The translations under genes were made by a program, and so were the position numbers. A DNA stretch of 64,000 nt from Phyllobates terribilis (lineage: Eukaryota): the NCBI RefSeq assembly GCF_046119375.1, contig NW_027362763.1, positions 420,298,001 to 420,362,000 on the forward strand. Direction: 5' to 3'. Shown here in pieces: positions 25,526 to 53,745 of the stretch. Within the stretch, counting starts at the first letter, position 1. The number at the start of each line of letters is the position of its first letter. The notes beneath the pieces are model-generated. The model was given only the letters and a program-made list of their open reading frames with translations, was not told the origin of the DNA and ran no database searches.

Positions 25526-26366
25526 TGTAACGGGGCCGGGAGGTGGAACCTCTGAGCTGCAATACAAAGGGGAAGTCCTTGTAAGGAAGCGGGTGACTCC
25601 CAGGGAAGGCAAGCAGGTAGCCACAGCAAGTGACGGGGACAGTCTCTGGGTAAGCAGGCAGGTGGTCACGGCAAGTGACGGGGACAGTCTCTGCTTAGAC
25701 AGGCAGGAGGTCACGGCAAGTGACGGGGACAGTCTCTGGGTAGACAGGCAGGAGGTCACGGCAAGTGACGGCAGGATCTCCAAGCAGGCTGGCAGAAAGC
25801 AATCAGGTGCTCCCAGGAGAGCGGGCAGACAGACGAGGCGGATACCTGACAGGTAACTGGCGGGCGCTCCCAGGTGAGCGGGCTGACGGAGACAGCAGGT
25901 AACAGGCAGGTAACTGGTGGACGCTCCCAGGTGAGCGGTCTGACAGACGAGGCAGATGACAGGCAGGTAACTGGTGGACGCTCCCAGGTGTGCGGTCTGA
26001 CAGACGAGGCAGGTGACAGGCAGGTAACTGGCGGATAACAGGCTGGCTGGCAGGACAAGAAGTCAGGCTAGCAGCGGGACCTGAGGGCTGAAGCACAGGA
26101 AGACACAGTGCAAACAACTTTGCTCGGGCACCTCCATTTTGGAGGAGGTGCCTTATATATGGGAGATCCTCCAGCTATTGGCCGGGGACTCCTTAGGACG
26201 GCGCGCGCGGCCCCTTTAAGAGAGAGGGAGTGCGCGCGCCCTAAGCACAGTGCCAGGGAAGCAGCGTGCGCTGCCAGCAGAGCGGGAGGAGGACGCCGAG
26301 CATGGAGCAGAGAGGTGAAGGGAACGGCGTCTCTGCCTAGCAGGAGGCAGAGACGCCGATGCTACA
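25526..26366 (-). repeat. 3' LTR of Gypsy 1 (841 bp)
   Basis: Direct repeat of 37261-38146. Contains internal 45-bp and ~57-bp tandem units and a TATA at about 26153-26160. Confidence 0.97.
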
Positions 26367-29300
26367 GTACCCCCCCTTTAGGCCCCCCCTTTCTTAGGCC
26401 AGGGAGAAATTTATCAAGGATGAGCGGGGCATGGATGTTCTCCCGGGGCTCCCATGTTCTCTCCTCAGGACCAAACCCCTTACAATCCACTAGAAAAAAG
26501 GTCTTTCCTCTTACCCTCTTGATGGCCAGAATGCTCTCTACCTCAAACTCGTCTTCAGCGGAGACTGGAGCAGGAGGCGTACCTGTAGACTTGGAAAAAG
26601 AGTTAAGTACCACGGGTTTGAGGAGAGATACATGGAAGGAGTTGGGGATCCGCAAGTTGGCCGGGAGTTTCAATTTATAGGCCACCGGGTTGATTTGCTT
26701 GATAACTTCCAGTGGGCCGATGAACCGGGGCCCTAACTTTTAGGAAGGAATCTTGAGCCGGACATATTTGGACGAGAGCCAGACTTTATCTCCAGGACGG
26801 AATTGGGGCAGATCCAGACGTCTTTTGTCAGCCTGTTTCTTCATCCGCTCAGAGGACTGAAGAAATGCGGATCTGGTACTCTCCCAAATGGAGGAGAATT
26901 TGCTAACGAGACTCCGCGGCCGGGTTGTCCACGGAGGTGGAGACGGGAAACAGGATCCGGGGATTTTGACCGTAGACTAAAAAACGAGGATTTGGAAAAG
27001 GATTCACTCTCGTGATTGTTATAGGAGAATTCGGCCCACGGTAAAAGATCCACCCAATCGGAATGGTGGGCATTAACAAAGTGCCGGAGGTAACTGGTTA
27101 AAATTTGGTTGATCCACTCTACTTGACCATTGGACTGTGGGTGATAAGCAGAAGAGAAGTCCAAGGTGACCCCCAGCAGTTTACACGTGGCTCTCCAGAA
27201 GCGAGATGTGAACTGGACCCCTCGATCGGACACGATGTGGAGAGGAAGACCATGGAGACGGAAAATATGATGAATAAAGTCCTTAGCCAACTCAGATGCA
27301 GACGGAAGACCTGGCAGGGGAATGAAGTGGCAGGGGTAGGCCATGGAGACGGAAGATGTAGAGGAAGAAGTCCTTAGCAAGCACTGATGCAGATGGGAGA
27401 CCAGGCAGAGGGATGAAGTGGGCCATCTTAGAGAAGCGGTCAGCGACCACCCAAATGACCATACAACCAGCAGAGACAGGGAGATCCGTTATAAAGTCCA
27501 TGGCTATATGCTGCCACGGGGCAGCAGGTACGGGAAGAGGCAGAAGGCGGCCGGCTGGCAAATGTCTAGGAACCTTGTTGCGAGCGCAGGACGCACAGGC
27601 TGAGACAAAGTCTATTACCTCATTGCGCAGGGTAGGCCACCAGTAATGCCGGGTAATAAGCTGGAGGGTCTTCTTTTGGCCAGCATGGCCGGCTAGCTTA
27701 GACGAATGTCCCCAGTGCAGAACCTTCTCACGATCAGGTACTGTCACGAACGTCTTACCGGGTGGAAGACGATTCAGATCCACGGGAGCCACCTGCATTA
27801 CTTTGGCGGGGTCGATGATGTGCTTTGGCTCCTCCTCAAGATCGGAGGACAGAAAGGATCTGGACAAGGCATCGGCTTTGATATTTTTGTCTGCCGGGCG
27901 GAAATGAAGAATGAAATCAAAGCGGGCGAAGAACAAGGACCACCGGGCCTGGCGCGGGTTAAGTCTTTGGGCACTCTGGAGGTAAGCCAAGTTTTTGTGG
28001 TCCGTATAAATTATTACTGGATGAAGAGCCCCCTCGAGCAAGTAACGCCACTCCTCCAGTGCCAACTTAACGGCTAACAATTCTCGGTCTCCTATAGAAT
28101 AATTGCGCTCAGACGAGGAGAAGAGTTTGGAGAAGAAGCCGCAGGTTACCATTCTCCCGGATGGCGACTTTTGGGTGAGTACCTCTCCGGCTCCGGAGGA
28201 GGAAGCATCTACTTCTAAGAAGAATTGTTTGTTGCAGTCCGAACGGTGCAGCACAGAAGCGGAGGAGAAAGCTTGTTTCAAAGAAAGGAAGGCCTCCTCT
28301 GCCTCGGGCGGCCATTCTTTGGGACTAGCGCCCTTACGGGTGAGCGCGGAGATAGGGGCAGTCCGGGAAGAGAAGTGCTTAATGAAGAGGCGTTAGTAGT
28401 TGGCGAAGCCCAGGAACCGCTGAATAGCCTTCAACCCCTCCGGTCGGGGCCACTTCAGGATGGCAGAAAGTTTCTCAGGATCCATTCGTAGGCCGGTCTG
28501 GGAGATGACGTAGCCCAGAAATGGAAGCGAGGTCTGCTCAAAGAGGCACTTCTCAAATTTTGCGTAGAGGTGGTTTTGCCTGAGCCTGAGCAGGACTTGA
28601 CGAACGTCCCTCCGGTGTGTGGGAAGATCCGGAGAGAAGATCAAGATGTCGTCCAGGCACACCACCAAGCAGGAGTAGAGAAGGTCACGGAAGATGTCAT
28701 TGACCAACTCTTGAAAGACAGCGGGAGCATTACAGAGGCCGAAGGGCATTACGAGGTATTCATAGTGGCCGTCCCGGGTGTTGAATCCCGTCTTCCATTC
28801 ATCCCCCCGACGGATACGGACCAGGTTATACGCCCCACGGAGATCCAGCTTGGTGAAGATTCTGGCACCCCTCAGACGGTCAAATAATTCAGGAATGAGC
28901 GGAAGGGGGTATTTATTCTTCACCGTGATCCGGTTAAGACCTCTATAGTCAATACTGGGACGGAGTGAACCATCCTTTTTTTTAACGAAGAAGAAGCCTG
29001 CTCCCGCCGGGGAGGTAGATTTCCGGATAAATCCCCGGGCCAGATTTTCCTAGATATATTCAGACATGGCCCGGGTCTCGGCAGCGGACAATGGGTAAAT
29101 ACGCCCACGGGGTGGAGTAGCGCCGGGTACCAGGTCGATTGGGCAATCGTATGGTCTATGAGGGGGTAATGTCTCTGCTTCTTTCTTGTTGAAAACATCA
29201 GCATAAGACCAATAAGGGACCGGTAGGCCGGGTAGATTGGCTGGAGAAGAGAGGGACGAGCAGGACGAATAGGAACTAAACAAGTCTTATGGCAGTCCTG

Positions 29301-29700
29301 CCCCCAGCGTAGGACTTCTCCGGTCTGCCAATTCAGCACGGGTGCATGTCTCTGGAGCCAAGGTAGGCCTAACAAAAGGGCGTGAGAGAGTCCGGGTAGA
29401 ACATGGAAGAAGATGCTCTGAGTGCAGCATTCCCTCCTGCAGAGTTATGGGTTCGGTGATGAGTTGGATGGTTTGCGGTAAGAGACCCCCATCCACGGAG
29501 GCGACAGATAAGGGTTCAGCCAGAGGTTTAGTGGGAATGCGGTATTTCTCTACCAGGGACTGAGAAATGAGATTTCCGGCAGCTCCAGAATCAAGTTGAG
29601 CTAGTTCAAAGTAACGGTTCTCCCCTCAGATGATGGAGAGGGTTTACTCTTGTCTAGGACGACCTCTCTGAGCGCTCCTAGACACAGGCGTTTCCCGGCC
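26362..29700 (-). pseudogene. pol: Gypsy 1 pol (protease LDSGA, RT, RNase H, integrase, chromodomain)
   Basis: 28393-28923 is RT ([18 protein letters not shown]); 27292-28281 is RH plus IN zinc finger; 26841-27380 is the IN core; 26362-26685 is GPY/F plus chromodomain (FEVESIL...W EP). Several stops and frameshifts. Confidence 0.93.
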
Positions 29701-30920
29701 TCTCTGGGCAGGCACGGATCTGGTGCTCCTTACTGCCACAGTAGAAACAGCTCCCCTCGGCACGGCGTGACTCTTGACGGGTTTTGACCATCTTGGTCTG
29801 GTTGGTTGACCTGCATGGGCTCTGGCGAGTGCACCCGGGGAGTTACAGATGAAGAGACGGGTCTCTGGAAAGTAGGAGCAAGTCGGGGAAACTTCCTCTC
29901 ACGGGTGACCTCTTTGGTACGCTCCTGGAACCGGATGTCAATCCGGGTGGCAAGTGTCACCAAGTCATCCAGGGTGGTTGGAATGTCCCGACCGGCAAGT
30001 TCATCTTTAATCCGGCCGGATAGGCCCTCCCAGAAGACAGACACCAGGGCCTCGTTATCCCAGGCGAGCTCGGAAGCAAGGGTACGGAACCGTATGGCAT
30101 ATTGTCCCACGGTGAGACTCCCTTGGCGGAGGCGTAGCAGAGAGGAGGCAGAAGAGGTCTTTCAGCAGCAGAAGGGAAGGAAGGGAGACACAGATTCTCT
30201 ACTTCGTGGGGTAGGCGGAGCCCCATAGGATAGTCACCTCAGATTGGAAAATGACGACCGGCCCCTCCAGTATATAGGCTCCTCCTACTCCCATGTTCAT
30301 CAGTCTTTTTATCTGAGGTCTCAGAGGATAGTCGCTGCTTCGGCAGCTCCTCAGAAGAGTTTGTTATTTTATATCCAGCGATTCCTGGACCCCCCGTGGT
30401 TTAGAGGTCTCTAGGGGTCTCGGCGCTGCTGAGACCCCTGACCCTCCCCTGGCAGCTCTGTGTACCCCTTGAGGAGGTTCCCACTTATGCCTGCCGGCCC
30501 CGGGGGATACAGGGCGCTCCCTGGCGGAGGCGCACACCACACATCTGAGAGGGTCCCTGCGTGCTCTGCCATAGGGGGGAGCAAAGGGCCATGGCGCCAC
30601 ACATCCCTGAGGATCCCTGTGGCGTTCAGCCGGGTAAGTGCTCTTTGGTCTAAAGAGTATCTTTGACGGCTACGGCAAGTGTACTGCCTGTGTGTTTCTT
30701 GTCTATTTCAGACGCTGCCTTGACTGGGGAGCAGAGACGGAGGCCAGTAATTTTTATTTTTTATTTGCGCATGCTTTTTTCGTTTTTGCTTCCTGCCTTC
30801 ATTGAGGCAGGAAGCTCCCTGTATTTGCGCGCGTTTCCTTGCTTTTATTGACTTGCTTCCTGCCTTCATAGAGGTAGGAAGTTTTCTGCCCTCGTTTTTT
30901 GAATAAGCGCGGGCTTTGGC

Positions 30921-30992
30921 GGGGGGGGGGGGGGCGTGGTCTAGCGGGGGCGTGGCCTAGCGGGCGTGACCTAGTGGGGGCGTGGCTTAGCG
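30921..30992 (+). promoter_or_regulatory. Tandem GC boxes, probable internal DIRS promoter
   Basis: Four GGGCGTG(G/A) motifs separated by CTAG-like spacers, in a CpG-rich segment upstream of ORF1. Confidence 0.5.
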
Positions 30993-31117
30993 TCTCCTGG
31001 CTTCCTGCCGTCATTACTTAGACAGGAAGTGCTTGGTTGAGCACGCGCTGGCAGTCCCTGCTTCTCCCTCCGGCGTCCAGCGGCATCTCCTGCTCTCTGC
31101 TCCCCGTCCGTCCGTCC

Positions 31118-31442
31118 ACACACTCAGGAGGAGCGGTCGCCGCAGTACCGGTGAGTCCCCTCTGCCTCTGGCAGAGGTTCGTTGTCAGTGCTGTCACTTC
31201 GGCTACCTATTAGGAGTCCTCGTGAGCACTGCCGCTTTCCCTCCTAAAGCTATTTACTCCACTGACCTTTTTAGGCAGCGTAGTATTATAGTTGCTGTGA
31301 TGTTAACCCCTTCTGAACAAGTGGAGCTTTAGGGGAAACACATGGTGTTTAAGGGAATTTCTCCCTTTGATTTTTTTGCTCGGCATTTCTGGGGTAGCTC
31401 TTTTCTAAGAGTGAGCTTTAACCCTTCAGAGCCTGACGCATA

Positions 31443-31473
<31 letters not shown>

Positions 31474-31820
31474 TGAAGCGACACACTCAGGAGGAGCGGT
31501 CGCTGCAGTACCCCCTCTGCCTCTGGCAGGGGTTCTTTGTCAGTGCTGTCACTTCAGCTACCTATTATGAGTCCTCGTGAGCACTGCCGCTTTCTCTCCT
31601 AAAGCTATTTACTTCACTGACCTTTTAGGCAGCGTGGTATTATAGTTGCTGTGATGTTAACCCCTTCTGAAAAAGTGGAACTTTAGGGGAAACACATGGT
31701 GTTTAAGGGAGTTTCCCCCTATTGATTTTTGCTCGGCTTTCTGGGGTAGCTCTTTTCTAAGGGTGAGCTTTAACCCCTCAGAGCCTGACGCATATATAAA
31801 AAAAAAAAAAAAAAAAGAGT
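31118..31820 (+). repeat. ~363-bp tandem duplication in the DIRS 5' leader
   Basis: Copies start ACACACTCAGGAGGAGCGGTCGC at 31118 and 31481; each ends GCATATATA followed by poly(A). Confidence 0.93.
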
Positions 31821-31900
31821 GAGTTTTGAAAACAGGCTGTGCAGCTTTTACACTTTTTTTGCCATCCTTGTTGTACATCCTGGCATCTGGTGTGGGTGGC

Positions 31901-33202
31901 ATGTCGGATCAGGGGCCTGGGAGTGCGGATCGGTCTCCTGATCCGTTTCAGGTTCAGTCGCACGCCTCTGATACACTCAGGCCTTCTACTACATCAAGTT
32001 CAACGCTCAGTGATGTTAAAGTGGAGGCGCTCAGTCGCTCCATTAATAGTCTCTCTAGTCTCCTGGGACAGTGGGTGTCAGCTAGATCACACCCAATGCC
32101 ACGAGGTAAAAAGCGCCACAAGACTATGGTGGCGTTGTCTCCCTCGCAGAGCGCATCAGAGGCTTCGGATTCACCAACAGATTCGGTTGATGAAATTTCT
32201 GAGTCCGAAGAGGAGGATCAACAGGATCGCTCTGTTTCTCTTTCAGGTCGTGTAGATGGGCTTATTAAGGACATGCGGGAAGTATTAGAGCTGTCTGAAG
32301 AGCCGACAAGACCGTCTAGGTCGGCCCGTCTGTATCAGAAGACGCGCCGTGTTCGTTCTACATTACCTGCGCATGAGGAACTTAACGAATCGGTGGAGAA
32401 GGAGCGTCAGTGTCCGGATAAACGCTTCCGAGGAACGCGTTTTTTTGATGCCCTATATCCCTGTGCCAAGGAGATGTTTATTAATTGGGTTCCCTCTCCT
32501 GAGGTGGATATATCTCTGTCTCAGGTGACCAAGTCTTCCCTGCTTCCTGTTAAAGGGAGAGCCAATCTTCAGGATCCTTTGGACAGAAGATCGGAGTCAG
32601 CGGCGAAATCCATCTATGAAGCCGCAGGTCATGGTTTCCAAGCGGCCTTGGGGGCCATGTGGGCCGGTGAGGCTTCTCTGCGGTGGTTGGATCAGCTGCG
32701 TGCGGCGTGGCAGGATGGGACTTCGCGTTCAGAAGTGGAAAAGCTTTTTCAGCGAATGGAAGAAGCTATGTGTTATGGCAGAGATGCAGTACTGGACACT
32801 GCTTCAATTCTATCCAGGGCTCAGGCTTCGGCAGTCACGATTAGAAGAGCTCTGTGGCTTAAACAGTGGACCGGAGATGCGGTATCTAAACAGGGATTGC
32901 TTAGTCTGGCATATAAGGGCGGTCAGCTCTTTGGTTCAGATCTTTTGGAACTAATTGCCAAAGCTAAAGCTAAGGATGTTACTCTGCCTGGGAAAAAGGC
33001 AGTGGCATCCACAGCCAGCAGGACAGGGCCCGGCAGAGGTCTTCGGTCCTTTCGGGCCAGGGGACGATTCAGTCAGCCTTCTTGGAGATTGGGTCGTCCC
33101 TCATCCTCCGGCAGATCCGCCCAGAAATCTCGTACTCCCTGGAAGCAACGGTCCCGTCAGGACAGACGGGAGGTTGATAAAAAGTCCGCTAAGGCTGACT
33201 GA
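31901..33202 (+). CDS. gag: DIRS ORF1 (gag-like), uninterrupted
   Basis: Open frame from the first ATG at 31901. Ser-rich N-terminus, DPLDRR and RRALWLKQWTGD motifs, basic C-terminus; lies upstream of and overlaps ORF2. Confidence 0.85.
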   Translation: MSDQGPGSADRSPDPFQVQSHASDTLRPSTTSSSTLSDVKVEALSRSINSLSSLLGQWVSARSHPMPRGKKRHKTMVALSPSQSASEASDSPTDSVDEISESEEEDQQDRSVSLSGRVDGLIKDMREVLELSEEPTRPSRSARLYQKTRRVRSTLPAHEELNESVEKERQCPDKRFRGTRFFDALYPCAKEMFINWVPSPEVDISLSQVTKSSLLPVKGRANLQDPLDRRSESAAKSIYEAAGHGFQAALGAMWAGEASLRWLDQLRAAWQDGTSRSEVEKLFQRMEEAMCYGRDAVLDTASILSRAQASAVTIRRALWLKQWTGDAVSKQGLLSLAYKGGQLFGSDLLELIAKAKAKDVTLPGKKAVASTASRTGPGRGLRSFRARGRFSQPSWRLGRPSSSGRSAQKSRTPWKQRSRQDRREVDKKSAKAD

Positions 33203-35105
33203 CGCCAGGGATCCCCCCGAGGGCTCTCGGGTGGGAGGTCGTCTGCTACAATTCGGGTCGATCTGGCCATCCCACATAGCAGATGCCTGGGTGACACGGG
33301 TTATGTCGGCAGGCTATTTCATAGAGTTTCATTCTCTACCTCCAGACAGGTTTCGTCTGACGGGCATTCCGTCCGTGCCAAGACTGGCTGCCGCACTGTT
33401 TCAGGAGGCCGACTCTCTCCTACAGCAGGGTGTGGTGGTTCAGGTTCCTCCGGAAGACCAGGGAAAGGGTTTTTATTCCAACCTTTTTGTGGTCCCCAAA
33501 AAGGAGGACAAGTTTCGTCCGGGGCTGGATCTCAGGGATTTGAATATTTACGTCCAGACACGGAAATTCCGCATGGAGTCTCTCCGATCGGTGATGGCGA
33601 CCCTGTCGCAGTACGATTTCTTGGTGTCGATAGACATCCGCGACGCCTATTTGCATATCCCTATCGGCAGGGCTCACCAGCGTTTCTTGCGTTTCGCTAT
33701 AGGTCAAGCCCATTACCAGTTTGTGGCCCTACCCTTCGGGTTGGCCTCAGCTCCCAGGGTTTTTACAAAAATTCTGGCTCCTCTCATGGCGCTTCTTCGA
33801 AGACAGGGGGTTACGATCCTCCCCTACCTGGACGACCTTTTCATAGTGTCACCCACAGCAGAGGAGGCAATAACGGCTCGCGGTCTCTCCCTTCAGTACC
33901 TGATGGACTTCGGGTGGCTGATCAATTGGAAGAAATCGTCATTGGAGCTAGCACAGTCCATTCTTTTCCTGGGGATGCAGTTCGATACAGTTCGGGCAGT
34001 TGTGTCCCTGCCTCCTGTCAAACAGACGAACCTTCGTCTTCTGGTCCAGGCTATGAGGTCGGCGCTGTCAATGTCCCTTCGGGAATGCATGCGCCTTCTG
34101 GTTCAAATGGTGGCAACTATGGAAGCAGTACCGTTTGCACAATTTCATTCCCGGGATCTCCAAAACCTTATTCTGACCCATTAGGATCGATCGCTAACTT
34201 CTCTGGATCGCTCGGTCATTATCTCCCGCAGGGTGCGAGAGTCTCTTGGATGGTGGTTACGTCCGGAGACTCTATCCGTGGGGAAATCCTTCCTTCCCCC
34301 GAGATGGTCGGTGGTGACAACCGATGCCAGCCGGACAGGCTGGGGGGGAGTTTGGAACGACCTCTGGATTCAGGGGGTCTGGTCGCCAAAGGAGTCGTCT
34401 CTCCCGATCAACATTTTGGAGTTGAGAGCAATATTTCTCTGCCTCCAACATTGGACGGTCTTATTAAGCGGTCTACCGGTCCGGATCCAGTCGGACAACG
34501 CTACGGCTGTCGCGTACATCAACCACCAAGGCGGGACAAGGAGTTCCAGTCTCATGTCGGAGGTCTCTCGAATCCTGGTCTGGGCCGAGTCCAAAGTTCC
34601 AGCAATTTCTGCAATTCACATTCCAGGGGTGTTGAATATCTCGGCGGACTTCCTCAGTCGCGAGCAAGTGGACCCTGGGGAATGGAGTCTCCATCCAGAA
34701 GTGTTTTCTCTGCTGTGTTCCCGTTGGGGGACTCCTCAGGTGGACTTGATGGCATCCAGGCTGAACGCCAGGGTTCCGATGTTCATGTCCAGGTACAGGG
34801 ACCCGGAGGCGGTGGCGGTGGATGCTTTAGTGGCCCCGTGGGGTCAGTTCAAGCTGATCTATGCGTTTCCGCCGATATCCTTACTGCCTCTGGTGATCCG
34901 ACGGATCAAACTCGAAGGGGTATCAATAATTCTGATAGCACCAGACTGGCCGCGGAGGACATGGTATTCGACGCTGGTGTCTCTTCAGGCGGCACCTCCG
35001 TTTCCGCTGCCCCTTCGCCCGGACTTGCTCACTCAGGGACCCATTCGTCATCTGGACCTGAGGTCCCTTCGTTTGACGGCGTGGCTCTTGAGACCGAGAT
35101 CTTGA
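32955..35105 (+). pseudogene. pol: DIRS ORF2: RT, RNase H and methyltransferase-like domain, one in-frame stop
   Basis: SIDIRDAYLH, LPFGL and PYLDD (RT); TTDASRTGWG, INILELRA, SDNATAV and NISADFLS (RH); VDLMAS and YAFPP (MT-like). The TAG at 34182-34184 joins two same-frame ORFs. Confidence 0.93.
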
Positions 35106-36117
35106 CCCGTCGCGGTTTTTCGCCCGAGGTCATTGCTACCTTGTGGGCGGCCCGGAGTCCAGCTACGTCCAGGATTTATCACAGAACTTGGGAGTCTTTC
35201 TATTCATGGTGTTCTGGATCCTCGAGAAACCCGAGGGTTTTTTCCATCCCCAACTTCTTGGCCTTTCTGCAATCTAGTCTGGCCAGGGGTTTGGCAGTAA
35301 GTACGGTGCGGGGACAGGCTTCTGCTCTTTCCGCACTTTTTAGGAAGGCTATTGCCTCTCGCAGGGATGTTCGTTCTTTTTTTCGCGGAGTCGCACGTCA
35401 GTTTCGCCACGGAGGGCAGTTGTGGCTCCATGGCGGCTTTATCTAGTCCTGGAAGCCCTTCAGCATAGGCCTTTTGAGCCTATGGATTCTGCTAAACTTT
35501 TACTACTTTCTTGGAAGGTGGCCTTCTTGGTGGCAGTCACCTCTTTGAGAAGGGTATCGGAATTGGCAGCACTTTCTTGCTTACCTCCTTTCCTGGAATT
35601 TTTTCCGGATCGCGTGGTGCTTCGTACTCGTGAAGATTTTTTGCCTAAGGTAGTGTCACAATTCCACATTAATCAGGACATTGTGTTGCCTTCGCTTTGT
35701 CCAGGACCTAAGAATCCAAGGGAGCGGGCCTTGCACTCGTTGGACTTAGTGCGGGCATTGAAGTTCTATCTTACGATCACTCAAGGTTTTCGGAAGTCGG
35801 ACTCTCTTTTTGTAATTCCGGCAGGTCGTCGGCGTGGTCAACGTGCTTCCAAAGACACGATAGCTCGGTGGATCCGTTCAGCTATCCTGGAAGCGTACCG
35901 GCTCAAGGGCGAGCCTTGTCCGGTTAAAGTTAAAGCTCATTCCGCGAGAGCCATTGGCTCATCGTGGGCTTTTCGTCAGGGGGCCTCGGCAGCGCAGCTC
36001 TGCCGGGCGGCCACCTGGCGCTCCGTTCACACCTTTACTAAGTTTTATAAGGTGGACGTAAGTGCTTCAGCCGATGCGGCCCTGGGGCGCAGGGTCCTGC
36101 AGGCGGCGGTAATTTAA
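33914..36117 (+). pseudogene. DIRS ORF3 tyrosine recombinase, one frameshift near 35400-35425
   Basis: SLRRVSEL (R), KAHSAR (HxxR), TWRS and TKFY (Y). ORFs 33914-35446 and 35422-36117 are in different frames. Confidence 0.92.
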
Positions 36118-36235
36118 GTTATCCCTTTATTTAGTTTTCCATTATTTAGCGTGGTTTGCGCTCTTGCCTAAGTTTTGGGGTATGGAAGCTTCTGCCTCTA
36201 TTTCCCACTCTTAAGTAGGTACTGCTTTAGGACGT

Positions 36236-36350
36236 CCCACGAAGTAGAGAATCTGTGTCTCCCTTCCTTCCCTTCTGCTGCTGAAAGACGGATTTTGGTA
36301 AGAACTTACCTGTAAAATTCTTTTCAGCGAAGGAAGGAAGGGAGACACAG
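36236..36350. repeat. DIRS internal complementary region (ICR)
   Basis: Complementary in turn to the left ITR start, the right extension and the right ITR end. It contains the reverse complement of the circle junction (TGAAAGAC, 36282-36289). Confidence 0.95.
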
Positions 36351-37260
36351 CACCCTCCCAGGGCAGAAGTGTGTTGTTGTGTTTCTAGATGCAGCGCGTC
36401 TCCTTCCTGATGTCGATCTTCTGGACTGGGTTTAGCGCTCTACGGCTCTCCTTCCAGTTTCGCCAGCTCTACACAGTTGTCAGGTCCAATGGGGTATGCC
36501 TAAGACTGTGTGTTTCTATTACATAACCTGTTTTCTCTCATTTCAGAAGGGGATATGTTGTTCTGCTGGTTGGTCTGCTCTTCCTTAGCTTGTGTACGGA
36601 CTGATGAACATGGGAGTAGGAGGAGCCTATATACTGGAGGGGCCGGTCGTCATTTTCCAATCTGAGGTGACTATCCTATGGGGCTCCGCCTACCCCACGA
36701 AGTAGAGAATCTGTGTCTCCCTTCCTTCCTTCGCTGAAAAGGATTTTACAGGTAAGTTCTTACCAAAATCCGTCTTTCATCCTGGTTCGTCGAAGACTTT
36801 CCGGAAAGCCGTGAGAAAGGCTGGCAAGTTGGACACCAGGGGGTCTCCTCTCTCCCATAGAGGATTTAGCCAGGCCAGTGCCTCCCCAGTGAGATGGGAC
36901 ATGATGAAGGCCACCTTGGCCCGGTCGGTGGTGAACTGCTGTGCCAAAAGTTCTAAGTGCAGGGTGCACTGGTTAATGAAGCCCCGTGCCAGGCCGGGGT
37001 CTCCACCAAAACGAGGCGGGGTGGAAAGGCGGGGACCGGGAAGGGATGCCATGGTATTGATGGGCAGCGACGCTGCCGGGGTAGTAGTTGTGCGAGTGTA
37101 AGCAGCTCCCGATGAGGCAGTCAGTGTGTCCAGGCGGGAGTTAACACTACGCAGGTGACTCAGGATGGACTCCTGTTGGGACCTCTGACGGGATAGTTCA
37201 TGGCATTGGTCCAAGAGAGAGGGAGCTTGGGTGCCACCGGGTTCCATGGCCCAAGCAAAC

Positions 37261-38146
37261 TGTAACGGGGCCGGGAGGTGGAACCTCTGAGCTGCAATAC
37301 AAAGGGGAAGTCCTTGTAAGGAAGCGGGTGACTCCCAGGGAAGGCAAGCAGGTAGCCACAGCAAGTGACAGGGACAGTCTCTGGGTAAGCAGGCAGGTGG
37401 TCACGGCAAGTGACGGGGACAGTCTCTGGGTAGACAGGCAGGTGGTCACGGCAAGTGACGGGGACAGTCTCTGGGTAGACAGGCAGGAGGTCACGGCAAG
37501 TGACGGGGACAGTCTCTGGGTAGACAGGCAGGAGGTCACGGCAGGTGACGGCAGGATCTCCAGGCAAGCTGGCAGAAAGCAAGCAGGTGCTCCCAGGAGA
37601 GCGGGTAGACAGACGAGGCGGATACCTGACAGGTAACTGGCGGGCGCTCCCAGGTGAGCGGGCTGACGGAGACAGCAGGTAACAGGCAGGTAACTGGTGG
37701 ACGCTCCCAGGTGAGCGGTCTGACAGACGAGGCAGGTGACAGGCAGGTAACTGGTGGACGCTCCCAGGTGAGCGGTCTGACAGACAAGGCAGGTAACAGG
37801 CAGGTAACTGGCGGATAACAGGCTGGCTGGCAGGACAAGAAGTCAGGCTAGCAGCGGGACCTGAGGGCTGAAGCACAGGAAGACACAGTGCAAACAACTT
37901 TGCTCGGGCACCTCCATTTTGGAGGAGGTGCCTTATGTATGGGAGATCCTCCGGCAATTGGCCGGGGACTCCTTAGGACTGCGCGCGCGGCCCCTTTAAG
38001 GGAGAGGGAGCGCACGCGACCTAAGCACAGTGCCAGGGAAGCAGCGCGCGCTGCCAGCAGCGCGGGAGGAGGACGCCGAGCACGGAGCAGAGAGGTGAGG
38101 GGAACGGCGTCTCTGCCTAGCAGGAGGCAGAGACGCCGATGCTACA
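37261..38146 (-). repeat. 5' LTR of Gypsy 1 (886 bp)
   Basis: Direct repeat of 25526-26366 with one extra 45-bp unit. Confidence 0.97.
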
Positions 38147-38151
38147 GTCAA

Positions 38152-52918: not shown

Positions 52919-53745
52919 CTATACGGGCGTAACTGACCTTTTTTTTTCTTTACTTAGACGACGCTCACAATACTTAATCAAATGGTCAGCTTTACCACAA
53001 TAAAGACACGATCCCTCGGCGAATCTCCGATCTCTTTCCTGAGAGCTGAGTGACATAGCCCCAACCTCCATCGGTTCCCCGCCGTCAGAGCAGATTTTCT
53101 GGGGACTAGTACCTGACATTACAGGAGTCTTTACCTCATTGAGCCTGCACCTCAGTCTCCTGTCTATACGAACAGCTAACTGCATAGCTTCCTGCAGAGT
53201 CTCAGGTGCAGGGAATGCAATTAGCAAATCCTTAACCCTTTCACTCAGACCAGCAAGAAATAAACATCTCAGCGCCGAATCATTCCACTTAACTTCTGAA
53301 GCCCATCTCCTGGAGTGTGTGCAATAATTTTCAACATCATCTGACCCCTGATTCAAACGTCTAAGTTCTGATTCAGCAGATGAGACTCGATCAGGATCGT
53401 CATTTAATAGCCCCATAGCAGAAAAAATTCTTCAGCAGACCTTAAACACGGATCATTAGGCTGGAGAGAAAAGGCCCACCCTTGTGGTTCATTGCGCAAA
53501 AGTGACATAATAAAACCAATTCGCTGTGATTCATTCCCAGAGGACCTTGGTCTCAAACGAAAATATAACAAACAAGCATTTTTAAAGGAAAAAAATTTCT
53601 TGCTGTTTACCATAAAAACATCAGGCAGTCCTACCTTGGGTTCGACAAAATGTGCTCCAGGACAGCTACTCACGTGTTGCTGAAGCTCAGCCACCCCCAG
53701 AGACAATCCCTGCAGGCGTTGAGCCAAATCCTGGACGGAAACCAT
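52919..53745 (-). pseudogene. gag: Gypsy 2 gag with CCHC knuckle
   Basis: 53404-53745 plus 52919-53416 (frameshift); EPMEVG and CLYCGKADHLIKYC motifs. Confidence 0.9.

What the first reader, a model, noticed from the sequence alone, without database searches (positions are those of the whole stretch)
30157..36779. DIRS integration footprint: 8-bp core GTCTTTCA at both junctions equals the circle junction
Seen: GTCTTTCA at 30157-30164 and 36772-36779, and the ICR holds its complement (36282-36289) within the predicted circle junction CCGTCTTTCAGCAGC. Collapsing to one core restores the gag register: DEPG*KTSSASSLLRLRQG aligns without gaps to DDPDRVSSAESELRRLNQG of Gypsy 2, so the target was GTCTTTC(A/G), with TGA in place of an expected Arg codon CGA. 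Established: tyrosine recombinases exchange strands across 6-8-bp overlap regions, and DIRS1 elements use a circular intermediate and are usually described with little or no TSD. Inference: this family integrates by homology to a 7-8-bp core, like a sequence-specific integrase.
Basis: partly seen in the sequence, partly recalled or inferred. Interest (0 to 1): 0.75.

Follow-up and report, generated by a model that had tools for sequence, protein, structure and literature searches.

The report
Frog DIRS insertion with 8-base junction match
A young DIRS-type jumping gene sits inside an older Gypsy element in a frog genome, at a spot whose 8 bases match the DIRS element's own circle joint. That fits the published way these elements insert, and one case cannot show that all 8 bases are required.

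Summary
GTCTTTCA lies at both junctions (30157-30164, 36772-36779). [quoted passage not shown]

The element is a typical DIRS1-like retrotransposon with 131-nt perfect inverted repeats, gag, RT and a tyrosine recombinase. This copy's recombinase gene is broken by a frame change. It is inserted in the gag of a decayed chromovirus-type Gypsy on the minus strand.

New evidence: Gypsy-family contigs from four individuals align through the 8-mer and then continue into left-flank-like sequence. So uninserted Gypsy copies already carry the 8-mer. It is neither a target-site duplication nor a redundancy of the element's ends.

The inference is only partly supported. Integration by recombination between the circle junction and an identical short target sequence is already the published DIRS model. 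That model needs 3 bp, and the 3 bp are TTT in all Xenopus families. TTT is the centre of this 8-mer. In this window 0.4% of TTT sites give five or more extra matching bases by chance.

The family-wide 7-8-bp rule is therefore untested. An unchecked note from this scan (s1-245176) reports another 8-bp case elsewhere in this genome.

The parts
30157..30164 (+). Left junction 8-mer GTCTTTCA. Under the TTT model, GTC is target-derived, TTT is shared and CA is the first two element bases.
30160..30305 (+). Left terminus of the DIRS element. It starts TTTCAGC, and the perfect ITR arm is 30175-30305.
31826..33202 (+). DIRS gag ORF (LAP2alpha-like domain).
32955..34184 (+). Reverse transcriptase ORF (RVT_1, E 1e-20).
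33914..35446 (+). ORF in another frame downstream of RT. It overlaps the RT ORF by 270 nt, and its last part (35081-35425) is the N-terminal SAM-like domain of the recombinase.
35398..36117 (+). Catalytic domain of the tyrosine recombinase (R...HxxR...Y columns present). It lies in a different frame from its N-terminal part, so the gene is broken near 35398-35425.
36236..36350 (+). Internal complementary region. The left half (36236-36289) is the complement of the left end. The right half (36282-36350) is the complement of the right end. The halves overlap by 8 bases at 36282-36289.
36599..36741 (+). Right ITR. The perfect arm is 36599-36729, followed by a diverged tip ending GCTGAAAA.
36742..36777 (+). 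Right extension (rE). It is complementary only to the ICR, contains its own small hairpin and ends ...CCGTCTTT.
36772..36779 (+). Right junction 8-mer GTCTTTCA.
36780..37364 (-). 5' part of the host Gypsy gag (DUF4939 / Ty3 capsid). It is interrupted by the DIRS element.
29400..30156 (-). Continuation of the host Gypsy gag after the insertion.
25526..26368 (-). 3' LTR of the host Gypsy, 92% identical to 37261-38148.
37261..38148 (-). 5' LTR of the host Gypsy.

Best explanation
A recently inserted DIRS1-like tyrosine-recombinase retrotransposon entered the gag of an older Ty3/Gypsy chromovirus. It did so by conservative recombination between its circle junction (...AAAATCC GTC TTT CA GCAGCAG..., kept in complementary form in the ICR) and a target that already contained the same letters.

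The exchange leaves one copy of the shared sequence at each junction, with no gain or loss of target bases. The only identity frog DIRS elements are known to need is the central TTT. The five further identical bases (GTC before it, CA after it) are most likely a coincidence of this one site, or at most a mild preference for longer identity. They are not a strict 8-bp requirement.

Shown: the anatomy, the identity of the three 8-mers, and the pre-existence of the 8-mer in uninserted Gypsy copies. Inferred: the circular intermediate, catalysis by the recombinase, and supply of the enzyme in trans because this copy's recombinase gene is broken.
For: - The ITR, ICR and right-extension architecture matches the published DIRS1-like layout, with perfect complementarity.
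- gag, RT and the recombinase domains are present.
- The host is a chromovirus-type Gypsy with 92% identical LTRs, so it is older than the DIRS element, whose repeats are 99-100% identical.
- Uninserted Gypsy-family contigs, 15-38 per run in four samples, align down to exactly 36772 and then carry left-flank-like letters.
- The gag frame is continuous across one core.
- Published model: a 3-bp junction recombines with an identical genomic sequence and makes no target-site duplication (PMC3266345; PMC7192593).
- All Xenopus DIRS-like families begin and end with TTT (PMC9210276).
- There are no inverted arms and no further junction-target similarity around the core.
- The empirical chance of the extra identity is 0.4% per TTT site.
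Against: A 0.4% event is rare for a single insertion. Another unchecked note from this scan (s1-245176) reports a second 8-bp case in the same genome, which would be somewhat unexpected if only TTT mattered. Typical tyrosine recombinases exchange strands across 6-8 bp, so longer identity could plausibly help. No other copy of this family was examined.
Confidence: 0.62

Rival explanations
1. The recombinase of this family exchanges strands across a 7-8-bp overlap region and needs, or strongly prefers, targets identical to the circle junction over that whole stretch. It would then behave like a sequence-specific integrase.
For: There is 8/8 identity between the target and the circle junction, with a sharp end to similarity on both sides. 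The target 8-mer pre-existed. The chance rate is only 0.4%. 6-8 bp is the usual overlap length of tyrosine recombinases (PMC3212892). Cryptons show 4-6-bp terminal direct repeats that are taken as recombination substrates. An unchecked note reports another 8-bp case in this genome.
Against: Family consensus sequences of 95 Xenopus DIRS-like families and 28 other elements share only a trinucleotide at their ends, so flanks beyond it differ between copies. No inverted binding arms flank the core. Two other GTCTTTCA sites in the window (28712, 41959) and many Gypsy copies with the site are unoccupied. This is one selected case out of many DIRS copies read by the scan.
Confidence: 0.25
2. Capture by host repair. 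A linear, largely single-stranded cDNA whose two ends were copied on the ICR slightly past the junction, and are therefore terminally redundant, annealed to a short stretch of identical target sequence at a break. Host enzymes joined it. The length of microhomology would then vary from insertion to insertion.
For: Dictyostelium DIRS-1 makes mostly linear single-stranded cDNA, and circle junctions could not be amplified there (PMC7192593). Microhomology at both junctions with no target loss is compatible with this. The recombinase gene of this copy is broken.
Against: The same paper argues for recombinase-dependent integration and excludes plain homologous recombination. Precise, loss-free junctions are more typical of conservative site-specific recombination. 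A broken recombinase gene is explained equally well by enzyme supplied in trans.
Confidence: 0.08
3. The 8-mer is an ordinary target-site duplication from a staggered cut, or a terminal redundancy belonging to the element alone.
For: The 8-mer is a direct repeat at both ends.
Against: The same 8 bases are inside the ICR at the junction of its two halves, which a duplication of arbitrary target sequence would match only 1 time in 65,536. Uninserted Gypsy copies carry the 8-mer, so it is not element-only. Removing it entirely would break the gag frame.
Confidence: 0.02

Closest known systems
DIRS1-like retrotransposons of vertebrates (XtDIRS / DIRS-n_XT of Xenopus, AcDIRS of Anolis)
   Same: ITRs of about 130 nt, an ICR made of two halves complementary to the two termini, and a right extension of about 36 nt. 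Also gag with a LAP2alpha-like domain, RT, a tyrosine recombinase, TTT at both ends and no target-site duplication.
   Different: In this one insertion the identity between target and circle junction runs 8 bases rather than 3. The best recombinase match in the protein collection is only 68% identical, so the family itself is not among the proteins held there.
Crypton DNA transposons
   Same: They are eukaryotic tyrosine-recombinase elements. Their insertions are flanked by a short direct repeat taken to be the recombination substrate shared by circle and target (PMC3212892).
   Different: Cryptons have no RT, ITRs or ICR. Their repeats are 4-6 bp and are seen family-wide (for example TATGG). 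Here the family-wide length is unknown.
Bacterial and phage tyrosine integrases (lambda Int, Cre/loxP, Flp/FRT; heterology-tolerant Tn916 and CTnDOT integrases)
   Same: Conservative exchange across a short overlap region leaves the shared core at both junctions. The catalytic R...HxxR...Y pattern is present. That Tn916- and CTnDOT-type enzymes need identity over only part of the overlap is from my own knowledge, and it offers a parallel for TTT-only identity.
   Different: No 11-13-bp inverted binding arms flank the core. The substrate is a reverse-transcribed circle.

Membership tests
DIRS1-like retrotransposon | Inverted terminal repeats | tested here: met
   Arms of 131 nt, 100% complementary, at 30175-30305 and 36599-36729. 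Diverged tips reach TTTCAGC and GCTGAAA.
DIRS1-like retrotransposon | An ICR whose two halves are complementary to the left and right termini and overlap at a short circular junction | tested here: met
   36236-36289 against 30157-30210 (100%), and 36282-36350 against 36711-36779 (99%).
DIRS1-like retrotransposon | gag, RT/RNase H and tyrosine recombinase genes | tested here: met
   Pfam LAP2alpha, RVT_1, Phage_int_SAM_4 and Phage_integrase (the last two weak). The recombinase is 59-68% identical to frog DIRS recombinases, and the catalytic columns are conserved. The gene is broken by a frame change in this copy.
DIRS1-like retrotransposon | Methyltransferase domain downstream of RT/RH | tested here: inconclusive
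   ORF 33914-35446 is in the expected place but gave no Pfam methyltransferase match.
DIRS1-like retrotransposon | Terminal trinucleotide NTT (TTT in frogs) equal to the circular junction, with no target-site duplication | tested here: met
   TTT at 30160-30162 and 36775-36777, and AAA at 36284-36286 in the ICR. The empty site is restored with no gain or loss of bases.
Sequence-specific tyrosine integrase with a 6-8-bp identical core | Identical core in both recombining partners | tested here: met
   For this single insertion only: 8/8.
Sequence-specific tyrosine integrase with a 6-8-bp identical core | Inverted recombinase-binding arms flanking the core | tested here: not met
   The circle-junction arms match 2 of 13 as a dyad. 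Junction arms against target arms match 4/13 and 2/13.
Sequence-specific tyrosine integrase with a 6-8-bp identical core | The same core at independent insertions of the family | not testable with these tools
No match was found in the metagenome or viral collections. The low-coverage contigs do not show flanks of single insertions.

The most novel reading that the evidence does not exclude
Frog DIRS recombinases, or at least this family's, choose targets by identity to the circle junction over the whole 7-8-bp strand-exchange region, with TTT only the invariant centre. That would reveal the length of the crossover region of a eukaryotic retroelement recombinase. It would predict insertion hot spots, for example this codon of the very abundant Gypsy family.
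Probability: 0.2. Interest if true: 0.6.

Novelty: new member of a known kind. Interest (0 to 1): 0.3.

Why it matters
How DIRS elements choose their targets has been inferred almost entirely from 3-bp overlaps in consensus sequences, and integration has never been reconstituted. This case is clean: a filled site, and paralogous empty sites that carry the full junction sequence. It is good supporting evidence for the circle-junction recombination model.

If a genome-wide survey showed the longer identity to be systematic, it would give the size of the exchange region and make target choice predictable. As it stands, the case is one well-documented example of a known mechanism.

Tried and rejected
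- Other copies in the window: self-BLAST and tblastn found none.
- Relatives in other frog genomes: the recombinase search found Ranitomeya, Anomaloglossus, Gastrophryne and Xenopus proteins at 59-68% identity.
- Exact right-end pattern in metagenome contigs: no match.
- Recombinase profile in viral contigs: no match.
- Recombinase profile in metagenome contigs: seven short, distant, partial loci without both ends, which are unusable for measuring the overlap.
- Laid contigs: they come from low-coverage runs, so flanks of individual DIRS insertions are not assembled. ICR contigs also mimic the junction. The family's own boundary could therefore not be read from them.
- Rejected readings: an ordinary target-site duplication, and an element-only terminal redundancy.
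- Rejected reading: a Cre- or lambda-type core site with inverted arms.
- Earlier-findings look-ups gave titles only, and the word search for the 8-mer found nothing.

Full report
**Observation.** The 8-mer GTCTTTCA is at 30157-30164 and 36772-36779 on the + strand, and its complement is at 36282-36289. The window holds five copies of the 8-mer against 1.56 expected from shuffles. None of 100 shuffles reached five.

The repeat finder shows three relations:
- Perfect 131-nt inverted repeats at 30175-30305 and 36599-36729.
- A 54-nt perfect complement between the left end (30157-30210) and 36236-36289.
- A 69-nt, 99% complement between the right end (36711-36779) and 36282-36350.

The two halves of the internal complementary region (ICR) thus overlap by exactly these 8 bases. 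Complementarity stops immediately outside them on both sides.

**What the element is.** It is a DIRS1-like retrotransposon.
- The gag ORF (31826-33202) carries the LAP2alpha-like domain.
- RT is at 32955-34184.
- A further ORF runs to 35446.
- The catalytic recombinase domain is at 35422-36117.

Frog DIRS recombinases (Ranitomeya, Anomaloglossus, Gastrophryne, Xenopus) are 59-68% identical to it. The R...HxxR...Y columns are conserved.

Full-length relatives align to two different frames, 35081-35425 and 35398-36111. The recombinase gene of this copy is therefore broken by a frame change there. The RT ORF and the next ORF also overlap in different frames.

Aligning the left terminus to the reverse complement of the right terminus shows the ITR running out to TTTCAGC on the left and GCTGAAA on the right. 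The right ITR is followed by a 36-nt right extension that ends ...CCGTCTTT. This is the published terminus layout, with right extensions of 30-34 nt in Xenopus elements (PMC3266345).

**The host.** The host is a Ty3/Gypsy chromovirus on the minus strand.
- LTRs lie at 25526-26368 and 37261-38148 and are 92% identical.
- The gag has DUF4939 / Ty3-capsid domains.
- RT, RNase H, integrase and a chromodomain are present in broken ORFs.

The Gypsy is clearly older than the DIRS element, whose repeats are 99-100% identical.

**Was the 8-mer in the target?** Yes. Translated separately, the gag piece ending at the right core reads ...FRKVFDEPG*K. The piece beginning at the left core reads *KTSSASSLLRLRQG..., in the same frame. 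Gypsy 2 (53345-53401) aligns without gaps and has CGA where this copy has TGA.

I also laid Logan contigs of four samples of the same species on 36150-37100. In every run, 15-38 contigs align from the Gypsy flank leftwards to exactly 36772. Their remaining letters (...GCAGAGATGAGGCGGATGAG) resemble the window's left flank (...GCAGAGAGGAGGCAGAAGAG). These are uninserted Gypsy copies that carry the 8-mer, or something close enough to align.

A minority of contigs (two in X8) have GTCCTCCG at that place and are clipped at 36780. That variant gives Arg-Arg on the coding strand. The table of other letters did not list position 36779, so I cannot say how many copies have G there.

This result rules out two readings. 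The 8-mer is not a staggered-cut duplication, and it is not a redundancy belonging to the element only. If exchange took place within TTT, the target was exactly GTCTTTCA. In that case GTC at the left junction and CA at the right junction are target-derived.

**What is already known.** The accepted model is that the element circle recombines through its 3-bp junction with an identical genomic sequence and produces no duplication.
- 23 of 28 annotated elements begin and end with NTT (PMC3266345).
- Malicki et al. restate the trinucleotide idea and show that the ICR is essential (PMC7192593).
- All Xenopus DIRS-like families have TTT at both ends (PMC9210276).

The TTT here is the middle of the 8-mer, so the insertion fits the known model. 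Only the length of 7-8 bp would be.

**Is 8 more than chance?** I aligned the circle junction at every TTT on both strands of the non-DIRS part of the window. Of 2962 sites, 12 (0.4%) share five or more further contiguous bases. That is rare for one insertion. But this scan has read hundreds of windows of a DIRS-rich genome, and the case was picked because it stood out.

A second first-reader note in the same genome also reports an 8-bp core (s1-245176). It is unchecked, and I could not see its sequence. Another note reports a junction at TTT only (s1-218012).

Around the core there is no dyad symmetry (2/13). There is also no similarity between junction arms and target arms (4/13 and 2/13). 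Two other GTCTTTCA sites in the window are empty.

**What could not be done.** The decisive test is the flanks of other copies of this family, and it was out of reach.
- The window holds one copy.
- The right-end pattern has no exact match in metagenome contigs.
- The recombinase profile found nothing in viral contigs.
- In metagenome contigs it found only seven short, distant, partial loci.
- The laid contigs come from low-coverage runs, in which single-insertion flanks are not assembled.

**Mechanism proposed.** I put this reading at about 0.6. RNA is reverse-transcribed, and the termini are completed on the ICR to give a circle whose junction is the complement of 36275-36292. A recombinase supplied in trans exchanges strands at TTT with a target that carries TTT. 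The extra GTC and CA identities are fortuitous, or reflect a mild preference.

The rivals are:
- A real 7-8-bp requirement or strong preference (about 0.25).
- Microhomology-guided capture of a linear cDNA by host repair (about 0.08).
- A duplication or element-only redundancy (rejected).

**Verdict.** This is a new member of a known kind, of modest interest unless a genome-wide survey shows the long core to be systematic.

Noticed in passing
window 31118-31464 and 31481-31816: A tandem duplication of a roughly 355-nt unit (92-97% identical) lies in the DIRS leader, upstream of gag. Each unit ends in a TA-rich stretch followed by a run of about 17 A, which looks like a small poly-A-tailed insert that was then duplicated.
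   Followed up: no
window 30537-30991: The DIRS leader holds several short repeats: 60-67-nt spaced copies of GC-rich palindromic units (30762-30888) and a 30-nt tandem GGGCGTGG...TAGC repeat (30932-30991). These recall the hairpin array noted elsewhere in this genome (s1-209103).
   Followed up: no
window 35398-35425 and 33914-34184: The recombinase gene changes frame near 35398-35425, and the RT ORF overlaps the next ORF in another frame. So this copy has perfect repeats but broken genes. Either it was copied in trans, or these are assembly indels.
   Followed up: partly
window 36790-36980: This stretch of the Gypsy gag attracts far more contigs and summed depth than the DIRS parts in all four samples, and it has many variant positions. 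That points to a very abundant and diverse Gypsy family. A minority variant has GTCCTCCG (Arg-Arg) at the insertion site.
   Followed up: partly
window 37326-37500: Three 45-nt tandem repeats (82-84% identical to the first) lie in the leader / 5' LTR region of the host Gypsy.
   Followed up: no
window 36733-36790 (circle junction as deduced from 36236-36350): As a single strand, the deduced circle junction folds into one long hairpin (-32 kcal/mol with DNA parameters). The two ITR tips pair (GCTGAAA with TTTCAGC), and the right extension forms a small hairpin at the top, with GTC just before the TTT.
   Followed up: partly
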